Sequence record: ON190024.1
Direction: 5' to 3' (one strand)
Length of the DNA stretch: 64,000 nucleotides
Shown here: piece by piece, positions 935-51,904 of the stretch
Numbering within the stretch: the first letter of the stretch is position 1
How the letters are laid out: every line of letters begins with the position of its first letter
Position numbers and translations under genes: made by a program
The notes under the pieces: model-generated
Told to the model about the DNA's origin: nothing
Databases searched by the model: none
What the model saw: only the letters and a program-made list of their open reading frames with translations

Positions 935-1195
935 ATGATGATTACTGAATACCTACGCAATAATACAGTTCGCGAAATGCTAGATTGCCCTGCTACTTCG
1001 CTTGCATTCTGGTCACAAGAATTCATGATCATCCCTGATGAAGATCTAACTTTTGTTGAAAACGATGAAAACGTTCTAATCAAGATGAACGAAATCGAAG
1101 TTGTTGTGCCGTACAATATGACGCTTGAAGATCTTGAGCAAATGTTCGGTGACGCACTAAGTGAACATGTTAGAAAGATTAAAGAACGTGTTTAA
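935..1195 (+). CDS. Hypothetical early protein
   Basis: ORF with GAGAG SD behind early promoter. Confidence 0.7.
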   Translation: MMITEYLRNNTVREMLDCPATSLAFWSQEFMIIPDEDLTFVENDENVLIKMNEIEVVVPYNMTLEDLEQMFGDALSEHVRKIKERV

Positions 1196-1242
1196 CATCG
1201 GTTTATCTCATACTATAATACTCAAACATTGAAGGAAATATT

Positions 1243-1701
1243 ATGATCTACATTGAAACAAGCAACATCCTTTCTGATGACACTCTCGGCTTTGCAATGG
1301 CTGGCGCGCCTCAAGTTGATAAACTTGAGAAAAAAGAGCGTGACAATGTGCTTAACAAAGCTGTTGAAGTCAAGCTCTACGAACGTCTTCCATCGACTGC
1401 TGTACTTGATTTTCTCTTGAATCAAAAAATTCCCTTCATCGCCGTACTGAGCAAAGTAGAAGTTATTGCTGAACAGCAACGTGCATGGTTTGATGCAATT
1501 GGCAAGCACTTGAATATTGATGTGATGTACACAGATTTTCAAGAAGTCGAGCACAATCTCGATACGCTGTTGATTGCTGAAGATCGACATGAACTGAAAC
1601 GTCACGCTCAAAATAACGGTAGAATTCTACCATTCACAACTGAAACACAATTTCAATTCATTATCGATCATCTATCTTCGGTCGACAATAAGGAGCAGTA
1701 A
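1243..1701 (+). CDS. Hypothetical protein
   Basis: ORF with AAGGA SD; TATAAT upstream. Confidence 0.7.
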   Translation: MIYIETSNILSDDTLGFAMAGAPQVDKLEKKERDNVLNKAVEVKLYERLPSTAVLDFLLNQKIPFIAVLSKVEVIAEQQRAWFDAIGKHLNIDVMYTDFQEVEHNLDTLLIAEDRHELKRHAQNNGRILPFTTETQFQFIIDHLSSVDNKEQ

Positions 1702-2051
1702 TGCAAGAGAAGCCAGATTTACTCAAAGACGACGAAATTGTTGATGTAGTCGAAGATCAAGAAGTTCTTGACTATCTTGATGAACTGCAAGCTCAACGTC
1801 GTGTGCTTGTTGAGAAAGAAGCACATCGTCGTATCAAGAAAAACTCGCGTGAGATTAAACGTCTGCGTAAACATGCTGAAAAGTGTCTAATCGAAGGTAA
1901 CAAAGCGGGTTACGTCTACGCAATCGGCAAACTTCGTTCTATTACTGGTCAGACAGTCGGTGACGATGTACTTGAAACGCTATGGGAAACGAGTCGTGAG
2001 CAAGTACTAACAATCGCACGCTCATTTGCAGAAGCGAAAGCAGGTCAATAA
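1701..2051 (+). CDS. T4 a-gt.4-like conserved protein
   Basis: IKKNSREIKRLRKHAE...YVYAIGKLR...LWETSREQV pattern; position upstream of gene 47. Confidence 0.6.
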   Translation: MQEKPDLLKDDEIVDVVEDQEVLDYLDELQAQRRVLVEKEAHRRIKKNSREIKRLRKHAEKCLIEGNKAGYVYAIGKLRSITGQTVGDDVLETLWETSREQVLTIARSFAEAKAGQ

Positions 2052-2515
2052 TGGACATTAAATCAGGCGCTGGTTATCCAGCCAGTGCGCTGTCAAACTT
2101 TGCGCCTCACGCATTCGTTGTGCGTGGTGTTGAGTGTGCTTCTATGGAAGGGTTTCTTCAGTCATTGAAGTTCAAAAACCCGGAAATGCAACGTGAAGTC
2201 TGCAAACTTGTGGGTAAAGTTGCTAAAGCACGCGGTGCGAAGAAAAACTGGCAACGCACTCAGACACTTTATTGGCAAGGTGAGCCGATTCAGCGTGCTT
2301 CGGTTGGGTATCAAACGTTGCTCGATGATGCATACGCTGCATTAGCTCAGAACGTGAAATTTCAAAAGGCACTGCTTGCTACTGGTAAAGCTACCCTTAC
2401 ACATTCAATCGGGCGTAAGAAGCAGGCAGAGACGGTTTTAACTGTACAAGAATTCTGTAGCCGATTGACAGTGATTCGGGAACATTTGCAGAATGAAGCT
2501 GATGAATGTAGTTAA
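2051..2515 (+). CDS. NADAR-family protein (T4 gp30.3-like)
   Basis: YPASALSNFAPHAF, SMEGFLQSLK, TLYWQG, LLATG motifs. Confidence 0.75.
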   Translation: MDIKSGAGYPASALSNFAPHAFVVRGVECASMEGFLQSLKFKNPEMQREVCKLVGKVAKARGAKKNWQRTQTLYWQGEPIQRASVGYQTLLDDAYAALAQNVKFQKALLATGKATLTHSIGRKKQAETVLTVQEFCSRLTVIREHLQNEADECS

Positions 2516-3005
2516 ATTAATGATTCGTGCGATTGCTCGTGCGAAGAAAACAGACAAGCCTATCGTATACATTGACATGGACAACGTGCTGGTTGACTTT
2601 CAGAGTGGGATAGATGCTCTTTCTATCTGGGAAAAGAATCAGTATGAGGGTCGATATGACGAATGTCCGGGTATTTTCGCTCATATGAAGCCGATGAAAG
2701 GTGCGATTGCTGCATTTGAAGTGTTGAACAAACACTTTGATTGCTATATACTGTCTACCGCCCCGTGGGATAATCCCGGGTCATGGCAAGATAAGCGTCT
2801 GTGGGTTGAACGTTACTTGGGCAAGGGTGCTTACAAGCGACTGATCTTGTCACATCACAAGCAGTTAAACTTCGGTCATTATCTCATCGACGACCGCACG
2901 AAAAACGGTGCAGGTGAGTTCATGGGCGAACACATTCACTTTGGCACAGACGAATTCCCTGACTGGTTTTCGGTTGTGACTTATCTTACGAGTGAGAACA
3001 AATGA
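2493..3005 (+). CDS. 5'(3')-deoxyribonucleotidase, HAD/NT5C family
   Basis: YIDMDNVLVDF, ILSTAPW, K..WV, YLIDDR. Confidence 0.85.
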   Translation: MKLMNVVKLMIRAIARAKKTDKPIVYIDMDNVLVDFQSGIDALSIWEKNQYEGRYDECPGIFAHMKPMKGAIAAFEVLNKHFDCYILSTAPWDNPGSWQDKRLWVERYLGKGAYKRLILSHHKQLNFGHYLIDDRTKNGAGEFMGEHIHFGTDEFPDWFSVVTYLTSENK

Positions 3006-11088: not shown

Positions 11089-12579
11089 ATGACAATCTAT
11101 ACATCAATTGAACGAATCGGCTCTAATCTTTGCGAACGCTACATCGACGACGACGGTTTTGAGCATATGCGCAAAGTGAAATACGAACCGACGTTGTTCA
11201 TTCACTGCAATGAAGAAACTGGATACAAAGACATTTACGGTCGCAACTGTCGCCCTAAGATGTTTGACACAATGGGCGAAGCGAGTAAGTACATCAAAGA
11301 CACGAAGCAGTTCAACGAAGTGCTTGGTATGGATGATTTCATCGTTACGTATATCTCAGATGTGTATAAGCAGCGTGAATTCGATATGTCTCGCATTCGC
11401 ATTGCTAACATAGATATTGAAACTCCGTCTGTGGAGTTCCCTGAAGCAGCACATGCGCCAGTGCCAATCACGTCAATTGGTCACTATGACAATATCGACG
11501 ATAAATTCTACGTTTACGGTATCCCGTCAAACACTGAGTGGAAACGCGAAAGCAGCATCGTTAAGCCAGAGCTTCTAGAAAAGACTGTTTATATTCGCTG
11601 TGCCACAGAAAAAGAGCTACTTGTTAAGTATCTTCAATTCTGGCGTGAGAAAACACCAGCAATCGTAACAGGTTGGAACATTGAATCGTTCGATATGCCG
11701 TACATCGTCAACCGATACAAGAATCTGTTTGGCGAGAAAGTGATGAACAGCTTGTCACCATGGGGTAAAGTTCAAGTATCAACTACAGTCAACGACTACG
11801 GTCAAGAAATCTGTAAAGTGAACATTCTCGGCGTATCTGAACTCGATTATCTTCAACTTTACAAGAAATTCACGTATGTGACACGACCATCATATCGTCT
11901 AGATTACATCGGTGAAGTTGAGCTTGATGAGAAAAAGGTCGAGTTCGAACAAGCGAACTACCTTGAGTTCTATGAGCAAGATTATCAGAACTTCATTGAC
12001 TACCAGATTCAAGACGTTAACTTGGTTAAGCGTCTAGATGAGAAGCTTCAGCTAATGCTTTTGACTATCTCTCTAGCGTACTACGCGGGTATCAACTATC
12101 AAACGGTATTAGGCACAATCAAACCGTGGGATGCAATCATCTTTAACAGCTTGAAAGCTGAGAAGAAGGTTGTTCCGATGATGCGTTCTCACGAAGGTGG
12201 ACGATTCATGGGTGCGTTTGTTAAAGCGCCTCAAGTGGGTTATCATCGTGGAATTGGCTCATTCGACTTGACATCACTATACCCGTCGATTATTCGCGAA
12301 TGTAACATTTCACCAGAAACAATCGTTGGTCAGCTTGACTACGAAGGGTCTCTTGAAGACCGTATCGACAAGATTGTTGAAGGGTTGATCACGTTCCCTG
12401 CTGATGATCTATCAAACAGCGCGAACGGTATGCAGTATCGCAAAGACGTACGCGGCGTGATTCCAGTTGAAATTGAGAAGGTTTTCTTCCAGCGTAAGGA
12501 AGCGAAGAAACTCGCGTTTGCTCATGAACAGAAAGTGATTGATGCAGAGGCTGAAATGAAACGAAGAGGTCTGATGTGA
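11089..12579 (+). CDS. 43: Family B DNA polymerase gp43, N-terminal part (exonuclease, palm motif A, first fingers helix)
   Basis: DIET ExoI, GWNIESFD ExoII, YQIQDV Exo[15 protein letters not shown]; ends at fingers tip with TGA. Confidence 0.95.
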
Positions 12580-12812
12580 AAATTGGGTATTGGCTCTCAG
12601 TAGTAAAGAGAGCCTATTTTCAGAAAAATGAGTTTTTGAAAGATGGGTCATCGACTAATGGCGTAATTGTTCCTGATGATTTCATTGGAACTAAGAGTCG
12701 AGCACGCGAAGAAATAAAACAAACTCTTTGTGCATTGTGGGTGCGGTATAAATGGGTCTTTACGTTGTTAGGTGTGATTGCAACGCTGATGACAGTTTTT
12801 CAAATCCCATGA
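12576..12812 (+). CDS. Small hypothetical protein with C-terminal hydrophobic segment, inside gene 43 insert
   Basis: GTG start overlapping 43A stop; [16 protein letters not shown]. Confidence 0.45.
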
Positions 12813-12952
12813 TATTATCGACGGTCTCTGGGTGAGGTGACGCTATGAAAATAGCGTCCTTTCCTGTCATTATACGATACAGACCGTCTTTGCCGTATAG
12901 CTTGATTGCATTTTCGATTGTTGTCACTGTACCTGACAGTGAACAATGGCGT

Positions 12953-13588
12953 CTAATTAGTAGTTGCATGGTCGATTACCTTCCATTCTGCCCACTTCTT
13001 TGCTTTTGAAAAGCAACGATAGCGTACTTTAGTTTGTGGTATATTGTGTTGTTCGGCTGCTAAACTAGCAACTTTGAATTCACCGAGTGGCGTGATCCAT
13101 GTGTAATCAGTACCAGCTTTCGGTTGATGCTTTTTACTTTCGGACATTCTCTTCTTGGTGTCTTCAGAGTGAGTCTTATCAAGCATACCCCGCGGGTGAT
13201 TGATACGAGCAGGGTTCAAATCGCCAACCCATTTACCTTGTTCGATGTTAATTTGGCGTATTTTCTCTTTAACGTCATCACGCTTAGATGGATTGTTCTC
13301 TGTCATATACTGTGAGTGTCGCTTTCTAGCGTGCTCATATGCGTATGACGGGATTTTCATATTACCTGACATGCGTATGATAGGAAGCCACATTGTACCG
13401 CCGTGAATGCGTGCTAAGAGCATGTGAGCTATATAGTGTTCTTTTGCAGTCAGTGCAATCATATTTTCAGCATCATCCGACCCACCTAAGCTGCGTGGTA
13501 CGATGTGATGCATTTCAGTATACCCGTCGATTGATTCTCGTTCTTTGCGTGTCTCAATTAGACGGTCGTAATGTTTCTGATAATTCAT
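12953..13588 (-). CDS. HNH homing endonuclease (Mob-like) with NUMOD-type tail
   Basis: EMHHIVPRSLGGSDDAENMIALTAKEHYIAH; late promoter TATAAATA at 13619-13626 minus; start placed at second ATG. Confidence 0.9.
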   Translation of the reverse strand: MNYQKHYDRLIETRKERESIDGYTEMHHIVPRSLGGSDDAENMIALTAKEHYIAHMLLARIHGGTMWLPIIRMSGNMKIPSYAYEHARKRHSQYMTENNPSKRDDVKEKIRQINIEQGKWVGDLNPARINHPRGMLDKTHSEDTKKRMSESKKHQPKAGTDYTWITPLGEFKVASLAAEQHNIPQTKVRYRCFSKAKKWAEWKVIDHATTN

Positions 13589-13618
13589 GTTTATCCCTAT
13601 AGATTCTTGAGTTATCAT

Positions 13619-13626
13619 TATTTATA
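13619..13626 (-). promoter_or_regulatory. T4-type late promoter
   Basis: TATAAATA on minus strand. Confidence 0.8.
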
Positions 13627-13655
13627 AAAGTTGATCAGACATTTGCGAGACATAA

Positions 13656-14756
13656 ATGACAATTGATAAAAATATTTCAGAAATGACCGACGAAGAGCTA
13701 ATCGCGTATCGTGATGAGCATAAACAGCAAGCAAAAATCTTCGACGTTCAACAAATGGCGAAAAAAATCCTAATCAACTCACTCTACGGAGCCTTAGGGA
13801 ACGAGTATTTTAGATTCTATGACTTGCGTAACGCTGAAGCAGTAACAGCTTACGGTCAGCTTGCAATCAAGTGGGTAGCGCGTGACGTGAACATTTGGTT
13901 GAACAAAGTTTGTAAGACAACTGACAAAGACTACGTGATTTACGGTGATACCGACTCAATCTACGTTAACTTTGATCCGCTGCTTGAACTGACAGGCATC
14001 AACAAGCTTGAGGGTGACGACTACACAGACAAATTCGCTAAAGTATGTGAGACTGTTGAAACGAAAGTTATCAACCCGTCATACGAAGCACTTCACAAGT
14101 ACATGAACACGTACGAGCGTCAAATGTTCATGGATCGTGAGGTACTAGCACGTACTGGCTTCTTTATCGCGAAAAAGCGTTATGCACTTGACGTACAAGA
14201 TAACGAAGGCATTCGTAAACCGAAGCTGAAAATCATGGGTATTGAGACTCAACGTAGTTCAACACCACCACTTTGCCAAAAAGGTCTTAAAGAAGCAATT
14301 CGTTTGATTCTGCAAGAAGGCGAAGCGAAGCTTCAAGAATTTGTAAAGGGGTATGAGAAAGAGTTCAAGGCAGCTCCATATCAAGAAGTGTCATTTGTAT
14401 CTAGTGCAAACAACATGAACAAATACTCTGATGATAAAGGCAATCCTGGTAAGGGATGTCCAGGTCACGTGAAAGGCGCGCTGTACTACAACAAACTTGC
14501 TGAAGAGCACGGGTTCGACAAGATCAACGAGGGTGACAAAATCGCTGTTGTGTTCTTGACTCGAAACAAGCACGGTATTGACCGTATTGCTTATCCGTCT
14601 GGTGGCAAATTGCCTGAAGCAATCTCATACTTGATTGATCACGTTGATTACAATCGTCTGTATGAAGATAAGTTCATCAAACCGTTGAGCGCGATTTCTG
14701 AAGCAATCAATTTCGACTACAAGAAAACAATCACTTTGGAGAGTTTCTTTGGCTAA
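13656..14756 (+). CDS. 43: Family B DNA polymerase gp43, C-terminal part (second fingers helix, palm, thumb)
   Basis: [25 protein letters not shown], terminal clamp-binding LESFFG. Confidence 0.95.
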
Positions 14757-42478: not shown

Positions 42479-43027
42479 ATGGCATTTATGAAAAAAGAGA
42501 AAGACGCAAAAGACATTACCGAAGCAGATATGCAGTACGCAATTGCAGTACAAAGTGTATGGATTCACAAACGCTACACAGCGATTATTCCAAACTGTTA
42601 CACCAAATGGGATAATGAAGCTGATCTGTTTGCTATCCGTCCAAGTGGTCTTTGTGATGAGATTGAAATCAAAGTATCCAAAGCTGATTTTCGAATTGAT
42701 GAACAAAAATCCGTTAAGGTCATCGACGAAAGTACGCCAAATTTACGTTGGCATCGTTACGAAGACGTTCCAAAACGCACAGCATTGCAAGATGGCAAGA
42801 TGTCGAACTACTTCTGGTATGCATTCCCTAAAGGGCTTGTAGACCATGCTGAAGTCCCAGAATGGGCTGGTATAATTGAAGTGGATGGTTATCTGAACGC
42901 CAGAGAAGTAAGAATGCCAAAGCGATTGCATGGTGGAAAGATGACAATCGAAGAGCAGCTAAAACAAATCAAGAAGCTTGGTTATCGCTTCTGGAATCTG
43001 GTTAAAAAGAACAAAAAGGAAAAATGA
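42479..43027 (+). CDS. PD-(D/E)xK nuclease-like protein (MmcB-like)
   Basis: EADLFAI...EIEIKVSKADF...YFWYAFP...PEWAGII. Confidence 0.6.
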   Translation: MAFMKKEKDAKDITEADMQYAIAVQSVWIHKRYTAIIPNCYTKWDNEADLFAIRPSGLCDEIEIKVSKADFRIDEQKSVKVIDESTPNLRWHRYEDVPKRTALQDGKMSNYFWYAFPKGLVDHAEVPEWAGIIEVDGYLNAREVRMPKRLHGGKMTIEEQLKQIKKLGYRFWNLVKKNKKEK

Positions 43028-43049
43028 GGCCCGAAAATTGGGCATCATC

Positions 43050-43103
43050 TTAGTAGAATTAGTAGTTTTAGTGAACTTAGAGATATTAGTAGTATTAGGG
43101 GAT
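43050..43103. repeat. Six degenerate 9-bp tandem repeats (TTAG-phased)
   Basis: TTAG at 43050, 43059, 43068, 43077, 43086, 43095. Confidence 0.85.
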
Positions 43104-43179
43104 TGAAAATAACTTGAGAAAGTTGTTGACAGTCCCCTTTTTTGATCGTACTATACAGTCCTTGAAGCAATTTATGTGA

Positions 43180-43716
43180 GTGAAGACTATGAACTTGAGT
43201 GAGCGTGAAGAAGAGCTAAAATCATTAGCTATCGACCATGTATATGATGGTGAAGTTGCTGTCACTGTTTCATGTGCTGGTATGAATAATTACTACACTG
43301 TTTGCCCGTCAGAGTTCAAAGACTTTTTGGACAACCATGAGGGTACAGCTTATGTAGCATTTGAATGGCACAACATCCCAGATGATTTACAAGATGAAGA
43401 GCTAGACTTTGACGGTCTACTTGCTTGGTTCAATCTAGATGAATCAGAGCGTGAGCTTTGCGAATTCATCTATGATCAGAATATTTGCATGTCTTTCGAA
43501 GATGCAGCCGAGAAGATTCAAGATTGTTGGGTATTCGAAGGCACTGCTGAAGATTATGCAGAACATGTCACCACTGAACTTATGGGTATCAGTGTAGATG
43601 ATATGCCAGCTATCTTACGCAGCAACATTAACTGGGGTGATGTTTTCATCGACCTTGAAGTAGATGGTAACATCTATGAAATGTCACGAGACAAATACTT
43701 AACAGTAAATGGTTAA
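43180..43716 (+). CDS. ArdA-like antirestriction protein
   Basis: Very acidic; EDYAEH..E...MPAILRSNINWGDVFIDL; behind TTGACA-17-TACTAT. Confidence 0.6.
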   Translation: MKTMNLSEREEELKSLAIDHVYDGEVAVTVSCAGMNNYYTVCPSEFKDFLDNHEGTAYVAFEWHNIPDDLQDEELDFDGLLAWFNLDESERELCEFIYDQNICMSFEDAAEKIQDCWVFEGTAEDYAEHVTTELMGISVDDMPAILRSNINWGDVFIDLEVDGNIYEMSRDKYLTVNG

Positions 43717-44295
43717 ATGAGTAGCACAAAAGGTAATGTTAACAAAGACGATTACTACGCTACGCCAGACTGGATAGTTGAAGAGTTTCTACTAGAGTTT
43801 GAAACTCGCATTCAGCATGAGCATGAGAAGAGCATGGCAGGTATGTACGTGCTCGATCCATCGTGTGGTGGTTGTTCAGAGCACAAAGCAGCTTATCCAG
43901 TAGCATACAAGAGCTTGTATCATGTCGATATAGACACGATGGACATTCGTGAAGACAGTCACGCGCAAATTATAGCTAACTATCTTGAAACGTCTGTTCA
44001 GAAAGACTATTACGACATGATTATGACTAACCCGCCATTCAGTTTATCAGTGGATTTTGCTGAAAAAGCAATGTCTGAGATACGCGACGGTGGTTATGTT
44101 GTCATGCTGCAACGTCTTAACTGGCTAGGTAGTATCAAAAGAAAGCCTTTCTGGGACAGTATGCCCCTGAGAGCAGTGATGGTTCATCATCGACGACCGT
44201 CATTTCACGGTACAAAAGGCACAGACTCAATCGAGTATGCGCACTTTATTTTTCAAAAAGGTTACACAGGAAAAGCGGAGTTGATGGTAATATGA
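43717..44295 (+). CDS. Amino-DNA methyltransferase (N6-adenine type)
   Basis: DYYATP, VLDPSCG, TNPPF. Confidence 0.85.
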   Translation: MSSTKGNVNKDDYYATPDWIVEEFLLEFETRIQHEHEKSMAGMYVLDPSCGGCSEHKAAYPVAYKSLYHVDIDTMDIREDSHAQIIANYLETSVQKDYYDMIMTNPPFSLSVDFAEKAMSEIRDGGYVVMLQRLNWLGSIKRKPFWDSMPLRAVMVHHRRPSFHGTKGTDSIEYAHFIFQKGYTGKAELMVI

Positions 44296-44501
44296 TTACT
44301 TCAGTTGAAACTTATGAGGGTCTGCTAGACACTTTCGAGCGCCCACAACAAATGAAAATCGTATCTGGTGAAGTTCACTATTCGATTTTTGGTATTAAAG
44401 TGCTACGTCGCAAATGCGACCTATTGCTAGAGACTTACTTGGTTTCAACTGACTCTCTTCTTGGCGATGTGTACATGTGGCACGTGGCAAAACGTTTATG
44501 A
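44292..44501 (+). CDS. Hypothetical protein
   Basis: ATGA overlap. Confidence 0.55.
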   Translation: MITSVETYEGLLDTFERPQQMKIVSGEVHYSIFGIKVLRRKCDLLLETYLVSTDSLLGDVYMWHVAKRL

Positions 44502-44521
44502 GAAAATTATTAAGGGAATTT

Positions 44522-44881
44522 ATGTCAAACTTCAAAGCAAATCTAGTATCTCGCAGCACGATTACTGTGAATAACAAGACATATCACGGCACGAGCGTAA
44601 CTATCAAGAATGGCAAAGTTGTCGTTGATGGTCGTGTTCAAGATGATGTATCTGATACTCAGGTGGTGAACGTGAACATTGAAGGCGATTGTACGCTTGT
44701 TCAAAATGAAAACGGCGATATTAACTGTCGTGATGTTCATGGTGATGCATCAACAACAAATGGTGATGTTGAGTGTGATAACGTCAGCGGTTCAGTATCA
44801 TCTACTAATGGCGACATCAAGTGTGGCAATGTCGGTGGTAGTGTTAGTACAAACAACGGGGATATTATCCGAAAATGGTAG
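44522..44881 (+). CDS. Protein with beta-helix-like STNGD repeats
   Basis: NENGDINC, TTNGDVEC, STNGDIKC, TNNGDI. Confidence 0.7.
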   Translation: MSNFKANLVSRSTITVNNKTYHGTSVTIKNGKVVVDGRVQDDVSDTQVVNVNIEGDCTLVQNENGDINCRDVHGDASTTNGDVECDNVSGSVSSTNGDIKCGNVGGSVSTNNGDIIRKW

Positions 44882-45147
44882 ACCAAACTCGAATCAAAGA
44901 AGTAATCGACACTGCGATTGAGAAAATCGAAGCAGGCTCAACGAGTTCATACAGTGTGCAAGAGTTCACGCCTTGCGACGTTGTGAACTACATGCAAGAA
45001 ATCGGTTACGAAGCGCAAGATCTTGAAACAAATGGCTGGCAAGTTGACTTCTGGCAAGAATTCACCAAAGACGGCTGCAAGAAGATCTGCTTTAATGGCA
45101 GTTGGTACTTCGGTGGCGCAAGTCTAAGTGAGGCTTACGATGAATAA
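44875..45147 (+). CDS. Hypothetical protein
   Basis: ETNGWQVDFW. Confidence 0.65.
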   Translation: MVDQTRIKEVIDTAIEKIEAGSTSSYSVQEFTPCDVVNYMQEIGYEAQDLETNGWQVDFWQEFTKDGCKKICFNGSWYFGGASLSEAYDE

Positions 45148-45439
45148 GCAAACTGATTTCTTTGGTCGTGAGATCAAAGACGGTGACTTTGTACTGCGTG
45201 CAAAGAACTCTGGTCGTTCTTATGCAATGAACGTACTACACGTTGTAGATATGCCAGACGGTAAGCGCAAGTATCTTGAACTGACTACTTACGGTAATTA
45301 CATTCGCAGTAATGCCAAATTACCTAGCGGTAGTTCAGCGACGATTGTCGAGCATGAAGTCGTCGAGAAAGCGTATCCTGATGCGTATCGCGCTGCATTG
45401 CAAGAAGCTGAAAACTTTCGCACGCCAATCCCACAATAA
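45140..45439 (+). CDS. Hypothetical protein
   Basis: DFFGREIKDGDFV; GAGG SD. Confidence 0.65.
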   Translation: MNKQTDFFGREIKDGDFVLRAKNSGRSYAMNVLHVVDMPDGKRKYLELTTYGNYIRSNAKLPSGSSATIVEHEVVEKAYPDAYRAALQEAENFRTPIPQ

Positions 45440-45494
45440 TGCTTGACACGTGTTGTCAGTCATGTATAATTCTCTGTAAACATAGGAGAGCAAT

Positions 45495-45632
45495 ATGATT
45501 GACAACATGATAAAAGACATGATTGAATCTGAGACTGAAGTCGAAGACATCATTGACTGTCTTGTTAACCAGTACAACGTACCTCAAGATGAAGCATTAG
45601 AAGCGATTCACGAGGTACTTAACGAAATGTGA
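45495..45632 (+). CDS. Small acidic protein (45 aa, not in ORF track)
   Basis: GGAGAG SD behind TTGACA..TATAAT. Confidence 0.6.
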   Translation: MIDNMIKDMIESETEVEDIIDCLVNQYNVPQDEALEAIHEVLNEM

Positions 45633-45639
45633 GAAATAT

Positions 45640-45786
45640 ATGACTTTGATTGAAGTGATAACGTTCATGCGTGAGAACGAATCATTGAGACAATTGTATG
45701 AAGACCCTGAAACTGGCGTACTTCATACAATCGTACGAAAGGATGATGGTTTTTATGTGAACGATTCTAAGATTTGTGATCTTTAA
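45640..45786 (+). CDS. Small protein (48 aa), paralog of 49606-49761
   Basis: FMREN...ETG..H...DGFY...KICDL shared with paralog. Confidence 0.65.
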   Translation: MTLIEVITFMRENESLRQLYEDPETGVLHTIVRKDDGFYVNDSKICDL

Positions 45787-46393
45787 GTTTGCAATTGTCG
45801 AAATGCCATCTATGCATCGCAGAAGAACCGCCTGATTTATTGCAATGTGGACACTGTACTAATGGCTTTGGTTTGCCTTTTAGTGAGTCTGACACTTTTT
45901 GTTTGTGTTCATCGGTTAACGTTACTCCGGTACGATCAAATGCTTGACGCTGTTTCTCATTCATTGAATCAGCATTGCCTTTGTTCCACGGTGTTCTGCC
46001 TTTCATCTTCTGCTTTGTCTCTTGTGAAAGGGTTCGACCAGTCAGTGTTTTTGATATTTTCTGTCTTGTCTCTTCGGAAACCGAACGATGCGAGTTTTCA
46101 CGTATGACTTGAAACATTCTTGATGTTGTGCGTGTACGTGATTGTTCACTATTTGATATTAACATCATATTCGCAGCGTACCATAACTTACCTCCGTGAA
46201 TCTTAGCAAGCAATAAATGCGCTATGAAGTGTTCGCGTGCAGTCATTGCGACTAGGTTATCGCTGTCGTCAGTTCCGCCTAAGCAGCGTGGGATTATGTG
46301 ATGTACTTCAACGTAGCAAGGAGCTGAAGATTTAGACCAGTTTCTAGATTGACACTTCTCGATTAGAAGTGTATAATGCTTTTCGTAATTCAT
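45767..46393 (-). CDS. HNH homing endonuclease (Mob-like) with NUMOD3 and C-terminal zinc finger
   Basis: EVHHIIPRCLGGTDDSDNLVAMTAREHFIAH; CPHC...RWHFDNCK. Confidence 0.9.
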   Translation of the reverse strand: MNYEKHYTLLIEKCQSRNWSKSSAPCYVEVHHIIPRCLGGTDDSDNLVAMTAREHFIAHLLLAKIHGGKLWYAANMMLISNSEQSRTRTTSRMFQVIRENSHRSVSEETRQKISKTLTGRTLSQETKQKMKGRTPWNKGNADSMNEKQRQAFDRTGVTLTDEHKQKVSDSLKGKPKPLVQCPHCNKSGGSSAMHRWHFDNCKLKDHKS

Positions 46394-46484
46394 TGTTAGT
46401 CCTCAGTGACTAGCAGACTTTTGGTGAAAATGTGACAGGTTGGAGTCTGAGTGAACCAACTTTTCGACCGCTAAATCTAGTCAC
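46394..46484 (-). ncRNA. Candidate structured cis-acting leader RNA (copy 2)
   Basis: GTGAC-T-AG/CT-GTCAC and GTTGG/CCAAC stems around TTTAGCGGTCGAAAA; covaries with copy 1. Confidence 0.6.
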
Positions 46485-46489
46485 GATAT

Positions 46490-46497
46490 TATTTATA
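46490..46497 (-). promoter_or_regulatory. T4-type late promoter
   Basis: TATAAATA on minus strand. Confidence 0.85.
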
Positions 46498-46509
46498 TGA
46501 GAGAAATTT

Positions 46510-48579
46510 ATGATTATTCACACTCCAGATAGTACAGTGCAAACATCTGGTAAGATGCGTACTGCGGGCTTCAACATGAAGGCGAGCGCCAAAGGGTTTA
46601 GGATCATTTCAACTACGCTGTACAAAGATCCAATTCTAGCTATTGTGCGTGAGCTTACGTGTAATGGCTGGGATGCGCACCAAATGAACAAGAATCTCGA
46701 CAAGAACATTGAAGTTCACTTGCCGAATCAGTTCGAGCCGTGGTTCTCAGTTAAAGACTTCGGTTGTGGCATGAGCGACGATGAAATCTTCGGCGTGTAC
46801 ACGACTGTGTTTGACTCGACCAAAGACGACTCGAACGACGTGATCGGTGCTATGGGTCTGGGTTCTAAGACGCCATTTAGCTACAACAACGGTCAGTCGT
46901 TTACTGTGAAGTCAACGAAGAACGGTTTGAAAGCTGTTTACTCTGCGTATCTTGATAAAGGTGAGCCAGCAATCACGTGTATGTCCGAGCCTGCGCCAAC
47001 TGATGAGCCAGACGGTGTTGAAGTAATCGTGCCCGTGCGCAAAGAAGACTTCAATCGCTTCAAAGAAGCTGCAAACAGTGTAATGCCGTACTTCAAATCA
47101 CCTGCTGTTGAGACGAATATCACGCTTTCTGAGCGTAAATTCACTCACATGCAAGGTTATTTCACTGAGAACAAGAAGAATTCTTGGCGTTCTGGTGATG
47201 TTTACGCAGTGATGGGCAATGTCTGCTACCCGCTGAGTGAAAGTCATATCAAAGACATTCATCTTGTGCGTAGCTACTTCAAAAACTCTGATTTGTACAT
47301 TGAGTTCCCTATTGGTGAGCTAGATGTCAGCGCGTCACGTGAAGAGCTTCACTATGATGACTACACGATTGAAAACATCAACAAGCGTGTGAATGCAATT
47401 AATGGTAAGTTCCTTGAAGAGGCGCAGAAGTGGGTTGACGATCAAAACTTCAAGCACATCGGTGATGCGTATCGCGCATGTGATAATCGCTTTAACGATG
47501 CTATCTTGAATAAGATGAAGTTCAACGACCAACTTGTTAAGTCGTATTCAAATGACATGCTGAAAGATTTCGCCATTCTCGGTAAAGTAGTTCAGTTGCG
47601 CCCTGAATACAGCAACAAAGAAGGTGTTCAGCGTCGCACTAACTTCGCTCGTCCATATGATCTCGTGAACCCGCGTAACGAGTACGAGAAAAAGCCGATT
47701 CATATCATTGTTGATGACATGAAATCTGGTGGCGTTGCTATCGCGAAAGAATACGTACGCGAAGAAGGTCAAGTGGTGTTCTATCACCACGATGATAAGC
47801 CGTCTACAACTGCTGCACTTGCATTCTTCAAAGATCGTCTGCGTGATTGTGAATACAAGGTGCTGAAGACATCTGTTCTGAAAGCGAATTACACGCCTCA
47901 GAAGAAGACAGTCAAGAAAAAGCCAGTCTCACCGACTATTCGCTTGTATGAAATGCGAATCAACGAAGACGGCGTTCGTACAGTTCAAGCGTCTGACGTG
48001 AAGCGCGAAGTGCTGAAGAACGACGAACTGTATTACGTGAGTTTGTTCCGTGATTACATCGAGAAAACTCCAGAGTGTGGTCATGGTCTAGATTACCATC
48101 GTTCTCTTGGAATGATCGAAGAGATTATGCGTATCAAAGGTATTGATGTTGTGTACATTGCACGTCGTCCAGAGTACGTACACATCAAAGACAACAAAAA
48201 TGCTGTGAATATCTTCGATATTAAGTTTAACAAGCGTGAGTTGCGTAGTAAAATTGACTGGAAATCTTACACAGTTGATAGTAATCTGTACGGCTATCGC
48301 AGTTCGCTAGAGAACACGTGGGCTAATACTGCTGTTCGTGACCATTTCGGTTACTCACAGTCTCGTAATACGTGCTGTCAGACGATTGATCGTCTATGTG
48401 ATAACTTCCCTGCTGTTCGTGAAATTCGCAAAGCAGAGCAAGAAAAGCACTTGGAAAAGTTACAAACTATCCAAACTGCTCCGAAATACAAGTTGCTGTT
48501 TGATTTGGTAAGTTCAAACACCAACACTGAATCAACGCAAAAACTAATTAAACTCTTGAGAGGAAAACGCAATGGTTAA
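46510..48579 (+). CDS. rIIA: rIIA protein
   Basis: GHKL-type N-terminus (LYKDPILAIVRELTCNGWDAH, DFGCGM, GLGSKTPFSY), VMGNVCYP. Confidence 0.9.
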   Translation: MIIHTPDSTVQTSGKMRTAGFNMKASAKGFRIISTTLYKDPILAIVRELTCNGWDAHQMNKNLDKNIEVHLPNQFEPWFSVKDFGCGMSDDEIFGVYTTVFDSTKDDSNDVIGAMGLGSKTPFSYNNGQSFTVKSTKNGLKAVYSAYLDKGEPAITCMSEPAPTDEPDGVEVIVPVRKEDFNRFKEAANSVMPYFKSPAVETNITLSERKFTHMQGYFTENKKNSWRSGDVYAVMGNVCYPLSESHIKDIHLVRSYFKNSDLYIEFPIGELDVSASREELHYDDYTIENINKRVNAINGKFLEEAQKWVDDQNFKHIGDAYRACDNRFNDAILNKMKFNDQLVKSYSNDMLKDFAILGKVVQLRPEYSNKEGVQRRTNFARPYDLVNPRNEYEKKPIHIIVDDMKSGGVAIAKEYVREEGQVVFYHHDDKPSTTAALAFFKDRLRDCEYKVLKTSVLKANYTPQKKTVKKKPVSPTIRLYEMRINEDGVRTVQASDVKREVLKNDELYYVSLFRDYIEKTPECGHGLDYHRSLGMIEEIMRIKGIDVVYIARRPEYVHIKDNKNAVNIFDIKFNKRELRSKIDWKSYTVDSNLYGYRSSLENTWANTAVRDHFGYSQSRNTCCQTIDRLCDNFPAVREIRKAEQEKHLEKLQTIQTAPKYKLLFDLVSSNTNTESTQKLIKLLRGKRNG

Positions 48580-49609
48580 TTTGCCAATCGAAACAAAACA
48601 GTCAATCGTTAAAGCATCTGCAAACGGCATGACACAGAAAGACAACGCGGCGAAGCATGGGACTTCGCCAACCACCCTGCGCCGTGTGCTTGCTGAACAC
48701 CGTGAAGGCAAATTCAGCTTAAACACTGCGAAGCAAGTAGTTAAGCGCCCATCTAAAGTGAAATCACGTTCGACTGACTTCAAAGCGAATCTAGACGAGT
48801 TGCTAGACGCTACTGGTACTAAAGAAGAGGCAAAGACGAAAGCACCTGAGTCTGAAAAGACTCTTGATCAGAAGCTAGACGAAGCGATTGAAGATTTCGC
48901 TTACGTGATTACGCCAGTTAACGTGTCATTCACGTTCAAAGGTCAGGCATTTTCTGCTGACATCACAGCTCCGAACTACAGCAAAATTGTTGCTGCATTG
49001 CTGGACAACGATGGTGAGCTTGCAGTTTCATTGCTTGATGTTGCGAAAGGCATCGAAGAATTCATGCTTGGTAATGTAGTTGTTAAGGGTGGCGTGGTTA
49101 AGTACAAAGATCTTGACATCGACGGTGGTATGACTGGTCGTATCCTTGAAGCAATGGAAGCAGGTGACAAGTCCCAAGTGACTAAGCTTGTTAAGTTCTT
49201 CGAAAATCTCATTGAGAACCCGTCACGTCGCGCTGTTGAAGAGCTTTACGGCTTCTTGGAAGCTGCTGACATCGAACTTACCGATGACGGTCACTTCCTA
49301 GCGTACAAAAAGATTCGCGACAACTACAAAGACATTCACAGTAACACTATGTGCAACAAGCCAGGCACTCGTGTGTGGATGCTACGTCACCAAGTGAACG
49401 ACGACAAAGATCAAACGTGTTCGGCTGGTCTTCATGTATGTTCGAAAGGCTACTTGCCACACTTTGGTGGTGCAGCGGGTAATCGTGTCGTGCTTTGTAA
49501 AGTGAACCCACGTGATGTTGTGTCGGTACCCTCCGATTACAACAATACAAAATTAAGATGTAGCGAGTATCTAGTCTTGAAAGAACTAGACCGCAATACT
49601 CTAAAATGA
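48572..49609 (+). CDS. rIIB: rIIB protein
   Basis: N-terminal HTH, ENPSRRAV.ELY.FL, DQTCSAGLHVC, KVNPRDVVSVP.DYNN.K.RC. Confidence 0.92.
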   Translation: MVNLPIETKQSIVKASANGMTQKDNAAKHGTSPTTLRRVLAEHREGKFSLNTAKQVVKRPSKVKSRSTDFKANLDELLDATGTKEEAKTKAPESEKTLDQKLDEAIEDFAYVITPVNVSFTFKGQAFSADITAPNYSKIVAALLDNDGELAVSLLDVAKGIEEFMLGNVVVKGGVVKYKDLDIDGGMTGRILEAMEAGDKSQVTKLVKFFENLIENPSRRAVEELYGFLEAADIELTDDGHFLAYKKIRDNYKDIHSNTMCNKPGTRVWMLRHQVNDDKDQTCSAGLHVCSKGYLPHFGGAAGNRVVLCKVNPRDVVSVPSDYNNTKLRCSEYLVLKELDRNTLK

Positions 49610-49761
49610 TTAGTCAAGAACTTATTCGAGTCATTATGTTCATGCGCGAGAACAATAGTAATCGCGCTGGCTATTATAATGATGAGACTGGTGAGATTCA
49701 TGTGGTAACCCGTCGAGAAGACGGGTTCTACATTGGAAGGACTAAGATATGTGAACTATGA
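49606..49761 (+). CDS. Small protein (51 aa), paralog of 45640-45786
   Basis: ATGA-coupled to rIIB; FMREN...ETG.IH...EDGFY...KICEL. Confidence 0.65.
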   Translation: MISQELIRVIMFMRENNSNRAGYYNDETGEIHVVTRREDGFYIGRTKICEL

Positions 49762-50451
49762 TTTATGTTTGCAGTTGTCAAAATGCCAGCGTTTCGATGC
49801 TGGCAATGTTGTTTCTTTGCAACAATGCGGGCACGTTACTTTTATGTTGTTTGGGTTATTTCTCTTCATTCGTTCTCGTTTTTGTTCGCGCTCTTCGTCG
49901 GACATGTTTTCTGCACGTTTTCTACTTGCTTCAGAAATCTTTCGACGTGCTTCCTCACTGTGCGACTTGCCATACATGCCGTGATTCTCGCCTGAGTTGG
50001 CTTGAGATAACTTAGATTTCGTTTCATCTGACATCGCGCCTCTTTTCTTACCACGCTTTGCATCTGCCATCTTTCTGCGAGATTCTAATGATGCCTTCTT
50101 CCCTTTGTTGTGTGGTGTTGTTCCTTTCTTAGCCTCTGACATCTTTCTCTTTGATTCATCTGTGTGCTTATACCCGTTTATTCTCCCTATGCCCCCGGGT
50201 ACTAGATTGTAATTGCTTTCTGATAGTACATACTCTTCAGTTACAATTTTTGATTCAAGTTCGTACATTTCTTCTTCTGTACCCGACGCAATAACTTCCA
50301 TATCTTCAAATGTGATACCATACTTGCGTATTGCTTGACCGATTGCGTAATCTTTACGAGCGTGTTCGTTGAATCGACGCTTCAAGTCGATAGTTACTCC
50401 GATGTACTCTTTACCGTTAACCGGATTTGTTATTTTGTAGAGATAAGCCAT
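49756..50451 (-). CDS. GIY-YIG homing endonuclease (Seg-like) with NUMOD3 repeats and C-terminal zinc finger
   Basis: YLYKITN..NGKEYIGVT..LKRRF.EH, YNL; CPHC...RWHFDNCK; TATAAATA at 50483-50490 minus. Confidence 0.9.
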   Translation of the reverse strand: MAYLYKITNPVNGKEYIGVTIDLKRRFNEHARKDYAIGQAIRKYGITFEDMEVIASGTEEEMYELESKIVTEEYVLSESNYNLVPGGIGRINGYKHTDESKRKMSEAKKGTTPHNKGKKASLESRRKMADAKRGKKRGAMSDETKSKLSQANSGENHGMYGKSHSEEARRKISEASRKRAENMSDEEREQKRERMKRNNPNNIKVTCPHCCKETTLPASKRWHFDNCKHKS

Positions 50452-50534
50452 GTTATGTCCTCTTTCAATTCTTTATACCATGTATTTATAATAAGACGAC
50501 GTGTGTTTGCATACTTATAAACCAAAATAATTGT

Positions 50535-50615: not shown

Positions 50616-50873
50616 ATGTCTGCACAATCAATTATCGCTGCACTAGAAGCAACTTACGACATCGACTACGCATGTACAACAACTGATGGCGAAGTTCATA
50701 CAATCACTGAGTATCGTGACATCATCGGCTGTCTTGTAGTGTCGCCACGACGTGGTAGTATCGGTGTTGGTTATGTTCATGACGATGCAGAAGACGACGT
50801 ACAGCCATATGACATCACTTGGTTCTCGTCTGACGATCTACACTCAATCGAAGTTCACATTGACTGCTTATAA
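50616..50873 (+). CDS. Hypothetical early protein
   Basis: GAGAG SD. Confidence 0.7.
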   Translation: MSAQSIIAALEATYDIDYACTTTDGEVHTITEYRDIIGCLVVSPRRGSIGVGYVHDDAEDDVQPYDITWFSSDDLHSIEVHIDCL

Positions 50874-51217: not shown

Positions 51218-51904
51218 ATGAAAAGACTGAAGAAACACATCAAAAAGTATGACGAACACGGCGTAGTTCAGTATAATATGCTGATGATATTCGCTTTGAT
51301 TGTCACAATATCAATGTCAATCGCACTTGTTGCGTCAAATATTCTGTTTGCATTTGAGCTTTCAGCTAGTGACGCTAACATCAAAACACCTGGCGATGCG
51401 TTCTGGACGGTTTGGATGGCTATGAGCACAATTGGATTTGGTGATCATTATCCCGTAACGACTGGTGGTAGATTTGTTATTGGTTCTATGTTTGTCGTTG
51501 GTGCGTCGCTGATTGGTCTTAACATCGGTATCGCGAATGCGTGGATTACATCTAAGTTCGACAAAAGCATACAGAATCGTGTGTTGAAGAGTCAAAACGA
51601 TGCTCTATTGCAGAAATTAGATCGTCTTGAGACACATCTAGGAATCGGTCAAGAGGTGTTGTTTTCGAAAGATGCTCATGGTATAGATACAATGATTGAC
51701 CAGTATTTTGACAGCAACGACAAAGCAGAGAGATTTGTCACACTCGGTCAAGATGATAGCGGTCGATATGTCGTGGCAATAAATCAGCAAATCATCGAAA
51801 CACAAAAGACATCATTGAAATGGCACACGTTCATTAAAGAAGATGATGCGACGAAATTCTACAAAGACACAAGTGAACTATTCCACACGGAGCTATTCAT
51901 ATGA
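51218..51904 (+). CDS. Two-TM potassium channel (KcsA-like pore domain)
   Basis: TM1, pore helix DAFWTVW, filter TIGFGD, YP.T..GR, TM2. Confidence 0.85.
   Translation: MKRLKKHIKKYDEHGVVQYNMLMIFALIVTISMSIALVASNILFAFELSASDANIKTPGDAFWTVWMAMSTIGFGDHYPVTTGGRFVIGSMFVVGASLIGLNIGIANAWITSKFDKSIQNRVLKSQNDALLQKLDRLETHLGIGQEVLFSKDAHGIDTMIDQYFDSNDKAERFVTLGQDDSGRYVVAINQQIIETQKTSLKWHTFIKEDDATKFYKDTSELFHTELFI

What the first reader, a model, noticed from the sequence alone, without database searches (positions are those of the whole stretch)
45640..50451. Duplicated small-ORF plus endonuclease-tail unit flanking rIIA-rIIB
Seen: two small plus-strand ORFs missed by the track (45640-45786 LIEVITFMRENESLRQLYEDPETGVLHTIVRKDDGFYVNDSKICDL; 49606-49761 LIRVIMFMRENNSNRAGYYNDETGEIHVVTRREDGFYIGRTKICEL) are clear paralogs. 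Each overlaps tail-to-tail with a minus-strand homing endonuclease. The two nucleases have different catalytic heads (HNH versus GIY-YIG) but the same C-terminal CPHC...RWHFDNCK zinc finger. So the conserved unit is small ORF + nuclease tail, repeated directly on both sides of rIIAB. Inference: the small protein may be a dedicated partner (inhibitor, immunity or targeting factor) that travels with this zinc-finger tail, or the target locus was duplicated; the repeats could also promote rII exchange.
Basis: partly seen in the sequence, partly recalled or inferred. Interest (0 to 1): 0.7.

Follow-up and report, generated by a model that had tools for sequence, protein, structure and literature searches.

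The report
Two-gene homing-endonuclease cassettes flanking rII
The two small paralogous genes are real and belong to two diverged copies of a mobile, roughly 0.9-kb homing-endonuclease cassette of KVP40-like Vibrio phages, a modest variation on a well-known kind of selfish phage DNA, and what the small protein does is still unknown.

Summary
The window is Vibrio phage PVA8, a KVP40-like Schizotequatrovirus. Two 48/51-aa plus-strand ORFs are paralogs (54% identity, E 6e-19). Each overlaps tail-to-tail with a minus-strand nuclease: HNH+NUMOD3 in one, GIY-YIG+NUMOD3 in the other. Both nucleases end in the same zinc-finger motif.

Relatives show that small ORF and nuclease are gained or lost together as 0.87- and 0.92-kb inserts, and the left edge of each insert is the small ORF's start codon. 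A third locus, on a metagenomic contig, carries the same unit with a GIY-YIG head.

Cassette A sits inside a ~5-kb tract that is 82-86% identical to KVP40, in a backbone that is 98-100% identical. That is a co-conversion signature.

The small protein is under purifying selection. It models confidently as a helix plus four strands, resembling the long-HPF C-terminal dimerisation domain.

It is not an obligatory partner of the nuclease:
- ValKK3 keeps the nuclease without it.
- More than 600 phage records carry the zinc-finger tail without it.
- D479 has the small ORF with no overlapping nuclease.

Best reading: a two-gene free-standing homing-endonuclease cassette carrying an accessory or cargo protein. 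The family is tiny, about six phages.

The parts
45640..46509 (.). Cassette A: 870-bp insert relative to KVP40 and phi-pp2, lying between the KVP40.0142 homolog and rIIA
   Evidence: Alignments with KVP40 and phi-pp2. An imperfect ~13-17-nt junction sequence, which is the rIIA translation-initiation region, is present at both ends.
45640..45786 (+). Small ORF A (48 aa, phrog_31987). It starts at the left edge of the cassette, 7 nt after the stop of the upstream gene, and uses the initiation context that precedes rIIA in KVP40.
45767..46393 (-). Mob-like nuclease A (208 aa): HNH head, NUMOD3 repeats, C-terminal CxxC...H..C zinc-finger motif
   Evidence: Pfam and phrog_655. The head is 47% identical to a second HNH gene at 12953-13618. 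The tail is 85% identical to that of the ValKK3/L011 GIY-YIG nuclease.
46349..46377 (+). Perfect sigma-70-type promoter (12/12) lying antisense inside the 5' end of nuclease A and pointing at rIIA. It is part of the insert.
46490..46497 (-). T4-type late-promoter consensus TATAAATA upstream of nuclease A, at the right edge of the cassette
   Evidence: Of 5 matches in the 64-kb window, 3 lie upstream of the three minus-strand nuclease genes.
46510..49609 (+). rIIA (46510-48579) and rIIB (48572-49609): resident genes bracketed by the two cassettes
49606..50525 (.). Cassette B: ~0.92-kb insert relative to phi-pp2, directly after rIIB, with a 7-nt junction repeat
   Evidence: The deletion in phi-pp2 was already noted in PMC3468402.
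49606..49761 (+). Small ORF B (51 aa, homolog of KVP40.0145). Its start overlaps the rIIB stop codon (ATGA).
49756..50451 (-). Seg-like nuclease B (231 aa, annotated SegD): GIY-YIG head, NUMOD3 repeats, same zinc-finger end
50483..50490 (-). TATAAATA late-promoter consensus 32 nt upstream of the start of nuclease B
42700..47900 (.). Divergent tract (about 74-94% identity to KVP40 in 100-200-nt bins, 82-86% per kb) containing cassette A, in a backbone that is 98-100% identical. This is a co-conversion signature. Its right breakpoint lies inside rIIA.

Best explanation
The two repeats are the left-hand genes of two long-diverged copies of one kind of mobile element: a ~0.9-kb free-standing homing-endonuclease cassette built from two convergent genes.

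Gene 1 is the 48-51-codon ORF.
- It begins exactly at the left edge of the cassette, at or just after the stop codon of the resident upstream gene.
- It is therefore read from the resident plus-strand (early/middle) messages.

Gene 2 lies on the other strand and is a modular nuclease.
- Its catalytic head is exchangeable (HNH or GIY-YIG).
- Its DNA-binding part is shared: NUMOD3 repeats plus a terminal zinc finger.
- A T4-type late promoter sits at the right edge of the cassette.

Spread (inferred from what is established for T4 seg/mob genes): during mixed infection the nuclease cuts cassette-free relatives, and repair copies the cassette plus flanking DNA.

Shown here: the small ORF is part of the mobile DNA, not of the target. 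It encodes a real, selected, well-folded small protein (one helix plus a four-stranded sheet, probably a dimer).

Inferred: it is an accessory or cargo gene of the cassette, not an obligatory immunity or targeting partner. Its product acts early and independently of nuclease catalysis, and it gives the phage or the cassette a reason to keep the pair. Its biochemical activity remains unresolved.
For: Joint gain and loss:
- KVP40 lacks ORF A and the HNH gene together, and phi-pp2 lacks both units. The empty sites are clean.
- At the rIIB locus, the small ORF and the Seg-like gene co-occur in the same 7 phage records and in none of the other rII-bearing relatives.

Third locus:
- L011 (Logan ERR525595) carries resident gene, small-ORF homolog and GIY-YIG/NUMOD3 nuclease, again with the ORF start at the insert edge, when compared with the cassette-free VH7D.

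Head swap:
- The HNH nuclease of PVA8 and the GIY-YIG nuclease of L011 are 50% identical over the C-terminal 104 aa, and about 85% over the last 34. Their heads are unrelated.

Horizontal arrival:
- The 82-86% identity tract around cassette A lies in a backbone that is 98-100% identical.

Coding and selection:
- A versus B: pS 0.81-0.90 (saturated) against pN 0.40.
- B orthologs: omega 0.24-0.50.
- The C-terminal residues are conserved in D479 too, where no nuclease overlaps them.

Fold:
- AlphaFold pLDDT is 93 and 91 for two members.

Expression signals:
- Both small ORFs start in positions that favour translation (B overlaps the rIIB stop; A takes the rIIA initiation context).
- TATAAATA lies upstream of all three nuclease genes in the window.

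Not obligatory:
- ValKK3 and other phages carry zinc-finger-tail nucleases without the ORF.
- D479 carries the ORF with no overlapping nuclease.
Against: - No direct evidence that the small ORF is transcribed or translated, or that either nuclease is active.
- The family is tiny: 4 protein clusters among 5.8 billion, and nothing in JGI metagenomes. All distribution arguments therefore rest on about six phages.
- D479 still has a homing-endonuclease gene next to the small ORF (divergent orientation) and a zinc-finger-tail nuclease elsewhere in its genome. A trans-acting partnership is not excluded.
- The loss of the ORF in ValKK3 and its break in L011 could be recent decay of a non-functional cassette. 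They would then not show that an active nuclease tolerates the loss.
- 'Accessory/cargo' does not name an activity.
Confidence: 0.55

Rival explanations
1. Dedicated partner. The small protein is made early and binds the NUMOD3/zinc-finger tail of its own nuclease. It would act as an inhibitor, timer or self-immunity factor, or as a targeting subunit.
For: - Linkage at three loci, with overlapping 3' ends.
- The ORF subtype tracks the tail subtype: A-type ORF with A-type tail in PVA8 and L011, B-type with B-type.
- By my own count of the translations, the protein is acidic (net about -5 in A and D479, -1 in B), while the tail is Lys/Arg-rich.
- Predicted expression is plus-strand early/middle messages for the ORF and a late promoter for the nuclease.
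Against: - ValKK3 retains an intact nuclease 98.9% identical in DNA to that of L011, with the small ORF deleted. In L011 the ORF carries one frameshift.
- 647 phage records have the tail and only 8 have the ORF.
- The closest other tails (Aes508, CZ01) have no companion ORF.
- D479 has the ORF without an overlapping nuclease.
- Subtype tracking is expected from physical linkage alone.
Confidence: 0.22
2. Neutral hitch-hiker. The ORF is a leftover neighbour gene from the cassette's ancestral home. It is carried along only because it overlaps the 3' end of the nuclease, and it has no function now.
For: Broken once in L011 and deleted in ValKK3. Homing is known to co-convert flanking DNA (PMC2988022; PMC10448857).
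Against: - Synonymous sites between A and B are saturated, while 54% of residues are kept.
- 17 alignment columns are invariant across four lineages.
- The fold prediction is confident even from a 4-sequence alignment.
- The ORF is intact at three different loci.
Confidence: 0.1
3. Ribosome-hibernation mimic. The protein is a free-standing copy of the long-HPF C-terminal dimerisation domain and interferes with 100S ribosome formation.
For: - Foldseek top hits for two models are HPF / ribosome-associated factor Y C-terminal domains (3lyv, 3ka5, 6t7o, 5ngm). Probability is up to 0.98 and query-normalised TM-score is 0.55-0.71.
- Weak Pfam PF16321 hit for the B-type members, E 0.013.
Against: - Foldseek E-values are 0.2-2, and the Pfam score of 15.6 bits is below the 25-bit cut-off.
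- A profile search of PDB sequences finds nothing.
- From general knowledge, not tested here: gamma-proteobacteria such as Vibrio use short HPF plus RMF, which lack this domain, so there would be no host partner.
Confidence: 0.05
4. Duplicated target or recombination repeats. The small ORF is resident target DNA duplicated on both sides of rII, and the two copies recombine to exchange or delete rIIA-rIIB.
For: The copies are in direct orientation on both sides of rIIA-rIIB.
Against: - Cassette-free relatives have no small ORF at either site.
- The units are only about 60-74% identical in DNA, and the longest exact shared word is 9 nt.
- None of the 51 related records shows an rII deletion between the two positions.
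Confidence: 0.03

Closest known systems
Free-standing homing endonuclease genes of T4-like phages (seg = GIY-YIG, mob = HNH)
   Same: - Same catalytic families, with NUMOD3 DNA-binding repeats.
- Intergenic position between conserved genes, and presence/absence polymorphism among close relatives.
- A flanking tract of foreign sequence and late-promoter control.
- Antisense orientation, as described for T4 segD (PMC2988022).
   Different: - Here the mobile unit is two genes. A conserved convergent 48-51-codon ORF forms the other end of the cassette at three independent insertion sites.
- The 'SegD' label is by similarity only. The neighbourhood does not match T4 segD (PMC3468402).
HEG-islands of ICP1-like vibriophages (Barth et al. 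2023, PMC10448857)
   Same: Nuclease genes at the boundaries of exchanged DNA, with cargo genes that benefit from homing. In PVA8 two nuclease genes bracket rIIA-rIIB, and an exchange breakpoint lies inside rIIA.
   Different: - Only PVA8 has both flanking nucleases.
- No evidence that rIIA-rIIB is conserved at >90% across distant phages as an island.
- The cargo proposed here is a tiny ORF inside the cassette, not an essential operon.
Modular homing endonucleases with shuffled catalytic and DNA-binding modules (I-TevI / NUMOD concept, Sitbon and Pietrokovski 2003, as cited in PMC5107563)
   Same: An HNH and a GIY-YIG head are joined to one NUMOD3 + zinc-finger DNA-binding part.
   Different: The swapped module extends beyond the nuclease gene into a second gene on the opposite strand.
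Nuclease-immunity pairs (colicin DNase-Im, toxin-antitoxin nucleases)
   Same: A small, mostly acidic protein is encoded next to a nuclease and is predicted to be made earlier.
   Different: - Convergent genes, not co-transcribed.
- Co-occurrence is not strict.
- No sequence or fold relation to Im proteins.
C-terminal dimerisation domain of long hibernation-promoting factor (Pfam PF16321)
   Same: Best structural match of two models, and a weak profile hit.
   Different: Below every significance threshold. No ribosome-binding N-terminal domain. Membership is not established.

Membership tests
Free-standing homing endonuclease cassette (T4 seg/mob type) | Nuclease with a GIY-YIG or HNH catalytic domain plus a DNA-binding module | tested here: met
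   Pfam HNH + NUMOD3 and GIY-YIG + NUMOD3. phrog_655 and phrog_314, both 'homing endonuclease'.
Free-standing homing endonuclease cassette (T4 seg/mob type) | Lies between resident genes, not in an intron or intein, with precise cassette-free sites in close relatives | tested here: met
   KVP40, phi-pp2 and VH7D empty sites
Free-standing homing endonuclease cassette (T4 seg/mob type) | Flanking co-conversion tract of donor sequence | tested here: met
   For cassette A: an 82-86% tract from ~42.7 to 47.9 kb in a 98-100% backbone. For cassette B only a mild dip to 96-97%.
Free-standing homing endonuclease cassette (T4 seg/mob type) | Site-specific cleavage of the cassette-free allele and preferential inheritance | not testable with these tools
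   No biochemical or genetic data found for these two enzymes.
T4 SegD ortholog | Same genomic neighbourhood as T4 segD | tested here: not met
   The gene lies after rIIB. PMC3468402 also reports that the neighbours do not match T4 segD. It is best called Seg-like.
Nuclease-immunity / toxin-antitoxin pair | Strict co-occurrence of nuclease and small protein | tested here: not met
   ValKK3 has the nuclease without the ORF. 647 records carry the tail and 8 carry the ORF. D479 has the ORF without an overlapping nuclease.
Nuclease-immunity / toxin-antitoxin pair | Direct binding of the small protein to the nuclease | not testable with these tools
   Only single-chain structure prediction was available.
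Long-HPF C-terminal domain (PF16321) | Profile score at or above Pfam's gathering cut-off | tested here: not met
   15.6 bits against a 25-bit cut-off. 3 of 5 members match weakly, all of the B type.
Long-HPF C-terminal domain (PF16321) | Same fold | tested here: inconclusive
   Top Foldseek hits for two models have query-normalised TM-scores of 0.55-0.71 and probability up to 0.98, but E-values of 0.2-2.
HEG-island (Barth et al. 2023) | Two or more nuclease genes flanking cargo that is conserved at the nucleotide level across otherwise divergent phages | tested here: inconclusive
   The bracket is present in PVA8 only. There is an exchange breakpoint inside rIIA. Cross-phage conservation of rII as an island was not seen.
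PeSL-bounded shuffling module (PMC4122927) | Promoter-stem-loop motifs at both ends of the inserted module | tested here: not met
   A perfect promoter lies near the right end of cassette A only (46349-46377). The left edge is a start codon, and cassette B uses the resident promoter-hairpin outside the insert.

The most novel reading that the evidence does not exclude
The small protein is a cassette-encoded, early-made regulator that binds the NUMOD3/zinc-finger tail of homing endonucleases. It would hold the nuclease off the phage's own or replicating DNA until late, or blunt related nucleases of co-infecting phages. That would be the first dedicated protein partner of a phage homing endonuclease, moving with the DNA-binding module while the catalytic heads are swapped.
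Probability: 0.2. Interest if true: 0.65.

Novelty: new variant of a known kind. Interest (0 to 1): 0.38.

Why it matters
Free-standing homing endonuclease genes are usually described as single-gene selfish inserts. Here the unit that moves is a compact two-gene module, and its second gene is conserved across three insertion sites and across a swap of the catalytic head.

If the small protein pays for the cassette's upkeep or tunes the nuclease, that would help explain how such cassettes persist in phage genomes. It would also give one ORFan family (phrog_31987) a context.

The locus is a clean natural example of three things:
- head/tail domain shuffling between HNH and GIY-YIG enzymes;
- a co-conversion tract that has replaced two-thirds of rIIA;
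- two nuclease genes bracketing a resident operon.

The scope is narrow, because only about six phages carry the small ORF.

Tried and rejected
- **Distant homologs of the small ORF.** The word-index search gave 4 clusters. The full HMM search gave only the window's own two ORFs, a short fragment that turned out to be one piece of the broken L011 copy, and spurious multi-repeat beta proteins (RCC1, FG-GAP, SdrD). IMG/VR returned only KVP40. JGI metagenomes returned nothing. GTDB genomes returned two chance hairpin-motif matches, inside an FHA-type protein and a shikimate dehydrogenase.
- **Resident gene at the ValKK3 locus (VH7D gp247).** I tested whether it is a relative of the small ORF because the C-termini look alike. 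BLASTP finds nothing and hhalign gives probability 1%. Rejected.
- **Vestige of a nuclease tail after the D479 copy.** Only a short, register-ambiguous resemblance. Not claimed.
- **Polarising the D479 arrangement with relatives.** No close relatives of that locus exist in the phage collection.
- **RNA structure.** There is no significant structure in either nuclease leader, and none after ORF A. Only cassette B has a hairpin after the small ORF (z -2.1), so it is not a shared feature.
- **Shared target motif.** A possible short shared motif upstream of insertion sites A and the ValKK3 locus was seen by eye only and is not claimed.
- **Published expression data for KVP40.0145.** None found.
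- **Structure of the protein pair.** Not possible with the single-chain tool.

- While reasoning I once read the two pieces through as one.
All comparisons used the sequences as they stand.
Full report
**Identity of the window.** The region is 100% identical to Vibrio phage PVA8 (ON190024.1; also PC-Liy1 and vB_ValM_PVA8), a KVP40-like Schizotequatrovirus. Fifty-one related records exist. They provide natural presence/absence comparisons.

**Check of the observation.**
- The small ORFs (45640-45786 and 49606-49761, plus strand) align at 25/46 identities, E 6e-19.
- The minus-strand genes are an HNH + NUMOD3 protein (45767-46393) and a GIY-YIG + NUMOD3 protein (49756-50451).
- These two proteins resemble each other only over the C-terminal ~116 residues, including the CxxC...RWHFDNC end.
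- The tail-to-tail overlaps are 20 and 6 nt.
- The WHFDNC codon pattern occurs only at these two places in the window.
- DNA similarity runs without interruption from the zinc-finger codons into the small ORF. A short indel in unit B makes its nuclease stop a few codons earlier than in unit A.
- Both small ORFs are annotated in the public record as hypothetical proteins and form phrog_31987.

**The small ORF belongs to the mobile DNA, not to the target.**
- KVP40 has the KVP40.0142 gene followed 7 nt later by rIIA. PVA8 has 870 extra bases there, consisting exactly of small ORF A, the HNH gene and its upstream region.
- The short sequence that precedes and includes the rIIA start is present at both ends of the insert. 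Small ORF A therefore sits in the initiation context that serves rIIA in KVP40, and rIIA receives a second copy.
- phi-pp2 lacks small ORF B and the Seg-like gene together, a ~0.92-kb difference with a 7-nt junction repeat. In cassette-bearing phages the rIIB stop overlaps the small ORF start. That deletion had been noted in the phi-pp2 genome paper (PMC3468402).
- Across the phage collection, the small ORF at this locus and the >90%-identical Seg-like gene occur in the same seven records: KVP40 twice, VH1_2019, phi-ST2, and PVA8 three times.

**A third locus.**
- The closest relative of the HNH protein's last 34 residues (85% identity) is not an HNH enzyme. It is a GIY-YIG nuclease of ValKK3, at a different site between a small resident gene and a PTH2-like hydrolase.
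- A 40.7-kb Logan contig (L011, ERR525595) carries the same nuclease at the same site. Its DNA is 98.9% identical to ValKK3 over 755 nt.
- Tail-to-tail with that nuclease, L011 carries a small-ORF homolog of the A type (L011:5001-5145), broken by one frameshift.
- The cassette-free relative VH7D shows that the insert again begins at the small ORF's start codon.
- In ValKK3 one deletion has removed almost the whole small ORF. The nuclease reading frame remains open, and the resident gene is three codons longer.
- The PVA8 HNH enzyme and the L011 GIY-YIG enzyme share 50% identity over the C-terminal 104 residues and nothing in the heads.
- The HNH head is 47% identical to another mob-like gene in the same window, at 12953-13618.
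- The unit 'small ORF + NUMOD3/zinc-finger tail' has therefore been combined with at least three heads.

**Evidence of horizontal arrival.**
- PVA8 and KVP40 are 98-100% identical over about 50 kb.
- Identity falls to 82-86% between roughly 42.7 and 47.9 kb. That tract contains cassette A and ends inside rIIA.
- This is the pattern expected when a homing-endonuclease gene is copied in together with donor flanks (PMC2988022; PMC10448857).
- It also shows how rII sequence is really exchanged here: by repair tracts around the nuclease genes, not by recombination between the two repeats. The repeats share no exact word longer than 9 nt.

**Is the small ORF a gene?**
- Between A and B, synonymous sites are saturated (pS 0.81-0.90), while the non-synonymous difference is 0.40.
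- Among B orthologs omega is 0.24-0.50, though on few changes.
- Seventeen alignment columns are invariant across four lineages.
- The C-terminal residues that overlap the nuclease in PVA8 are also conserved in D479, where nothing overlaps them.
- AlphaFold models of two members are confident (pLDDT 93 and 91) and agree: one helix and a four-stranded sheet.
- For both models the best PDB matches are C-terminal dimerisation domains of long HPF / ribosome-associated factor Y (query-normalised TM-score 0.55-0.71, probability up to 0.98, E 0.2-2).
- The B-type members give a weak PF16321 hit, E 0.013, below the cut-off.
- I take this as a fold resemblance that suggests a dimer, not as membership. 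Sequence searches of the PDB and the viral fold library give nothing significant.

**Expression signals.**
- Only five TATAAATA sites exist in the 64 kb. Three lie on the minus strand directly upstream of the three minus-strand nuclease genes. The nucleases are therefore probably late genes.
- The small ORFs lie in the plus-strand units driven by sigma-70-type promoters.
- Cassette A also carries a perfect promoter pointing at rIIA, embedded antisense in the first codons of the HNH gene.
- No shared RNA structure was found.

**How tight is the partnership?** Not tight.
- The zinc-finger tail occurs in 647 phage records, and the small ORF in 8.
- The next-closest tails lie beside DNA-polymerase fragments (Aes508) or regA (CZ01), with no companion ORF.
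- ValKK3 has lost the ORF while the nuclease reading frame stays open.
- D479 and a related Logan contig have an intact small ORF followed by another plus-strand gene. A Seg-like gene without the zinc-finger end lies divergently upstream.
- D479 also has a zinc-finger-tail Seg-like gene elsewhere in its genome, so action in trans cannot be excluded.
- The family was not found beyond these phages: 4 clusters among 5.8 billion proteins, and no true distant relatives in a full HMM scan of 1.84 billion representatives.

**Conclusion.**
It can be sharpened: these are two-gene free-standing homing-endonuclease cassettes bounded by the small ORF's start codon and the nuclease's late promoter.
- The functional part, a dedicated inhibitor, immunity or targeting partner, is possible but weakened. 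I put it at about 0.2.
- I favour a cassette-borne accessory or cargo protein with its own activity, still unknown, at about 0.55.
- Target duplication and repeat-mediated rII exchange are rejected.
- The finding is a new variant of a well-known kind of element. It has a narrow distribution and moderate interest.

Noticed in passing
window 12953-13618 (-), 13619-13626 (-), 13656-14756 (+): A third homing-endonuclease gene (HNH, mob-like, 221 aa, no zinc-finger end) with its own TATAAATA motif sits immediately upstream of an ORF encoding the C-terminal part of DNA polymerase gp43. KVP40 lacks about 1.2 kb here (window ~12510-13721) and has one continuous polymerase gene, so in PVA8 the polymerase gene appears split by the insert.
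   Followed up: partly
window 46349-46377 (+): A perfect TTGACA-17-TATAAT promoter with an internal inverted repeat lies antisense inside the first codons of the HNH gene and points at rIIA. The cassette seems to bring a replacement promoter for the gene it displaces.
   Followed up: partly
window 42700-47900: Mosaic tract: identity to KVP40 is about 74-94% in 100-200-nt bins (82-86% per kb) here, against 98-100% elsewhere. The right breakpoint is inside rIIA near 47.9 kb, so PVA8 rIIA is a chimera of two lineages.
   Followed up: yes
window 50616-50873 (+): An 85-aa gene (PVA8_364) just right of cassette B is absent from KVP40 and phi-pp2 but present in phi-ST2. This is a second indel adjacent to the Seg-like cassette.
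   Followed up: no
window 45495-45632 (+): The 45-aa KVP40.0142 homolog just upstream of cassette A scores above Pfam's cut-off for PqqD (26 bits against 23.4, E 1.2e-5). It may be a tiny stand-alone peptide-binding domain of the RiPP-recognition type.
   Followed up: no
window 49784-49805 (+): A perfect 9-bp hairpin followed by a weak T-run lies just after small ORF B, inside the zinc-finger codons of the Seg-like gene (fold z-score -2.1). It is conserved in phi-ST2 but absent from unit A and from L011.
   Followed up: partly
L011:5001-5145 and L007 (ValKK3) 2586-2840: At the third locus the small ORF is decaying while the nuclease reading frame stays open: one frameshift in the Logan contig and one deletion in ValKK3. 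The ValKK3 deletion also lengthens both the resident gene and the nuclease by a few codons.
   Followed up: yes
window 51218-51904 (+): A 228-aa protein annotated in phi-pp2 as a putative potassium channel (weak Ion_trans_2 hit in the phi-ST2 ortholog) lies two genes to the right of cassette B.
   Followed up: no
L004 (D479) 2159-2887 (-) and 976-2181 (+): The Seg-like gene next to the D479 small ORF overlaps tail-to-tail with a 401-aa gene that has a Cys-rich motif reminiscent of radical-SAM enzymes. Megablast reports 8 matching places for this 6-kb stretch within the D479 genome, so part of it is repeated.
   Followed up: no
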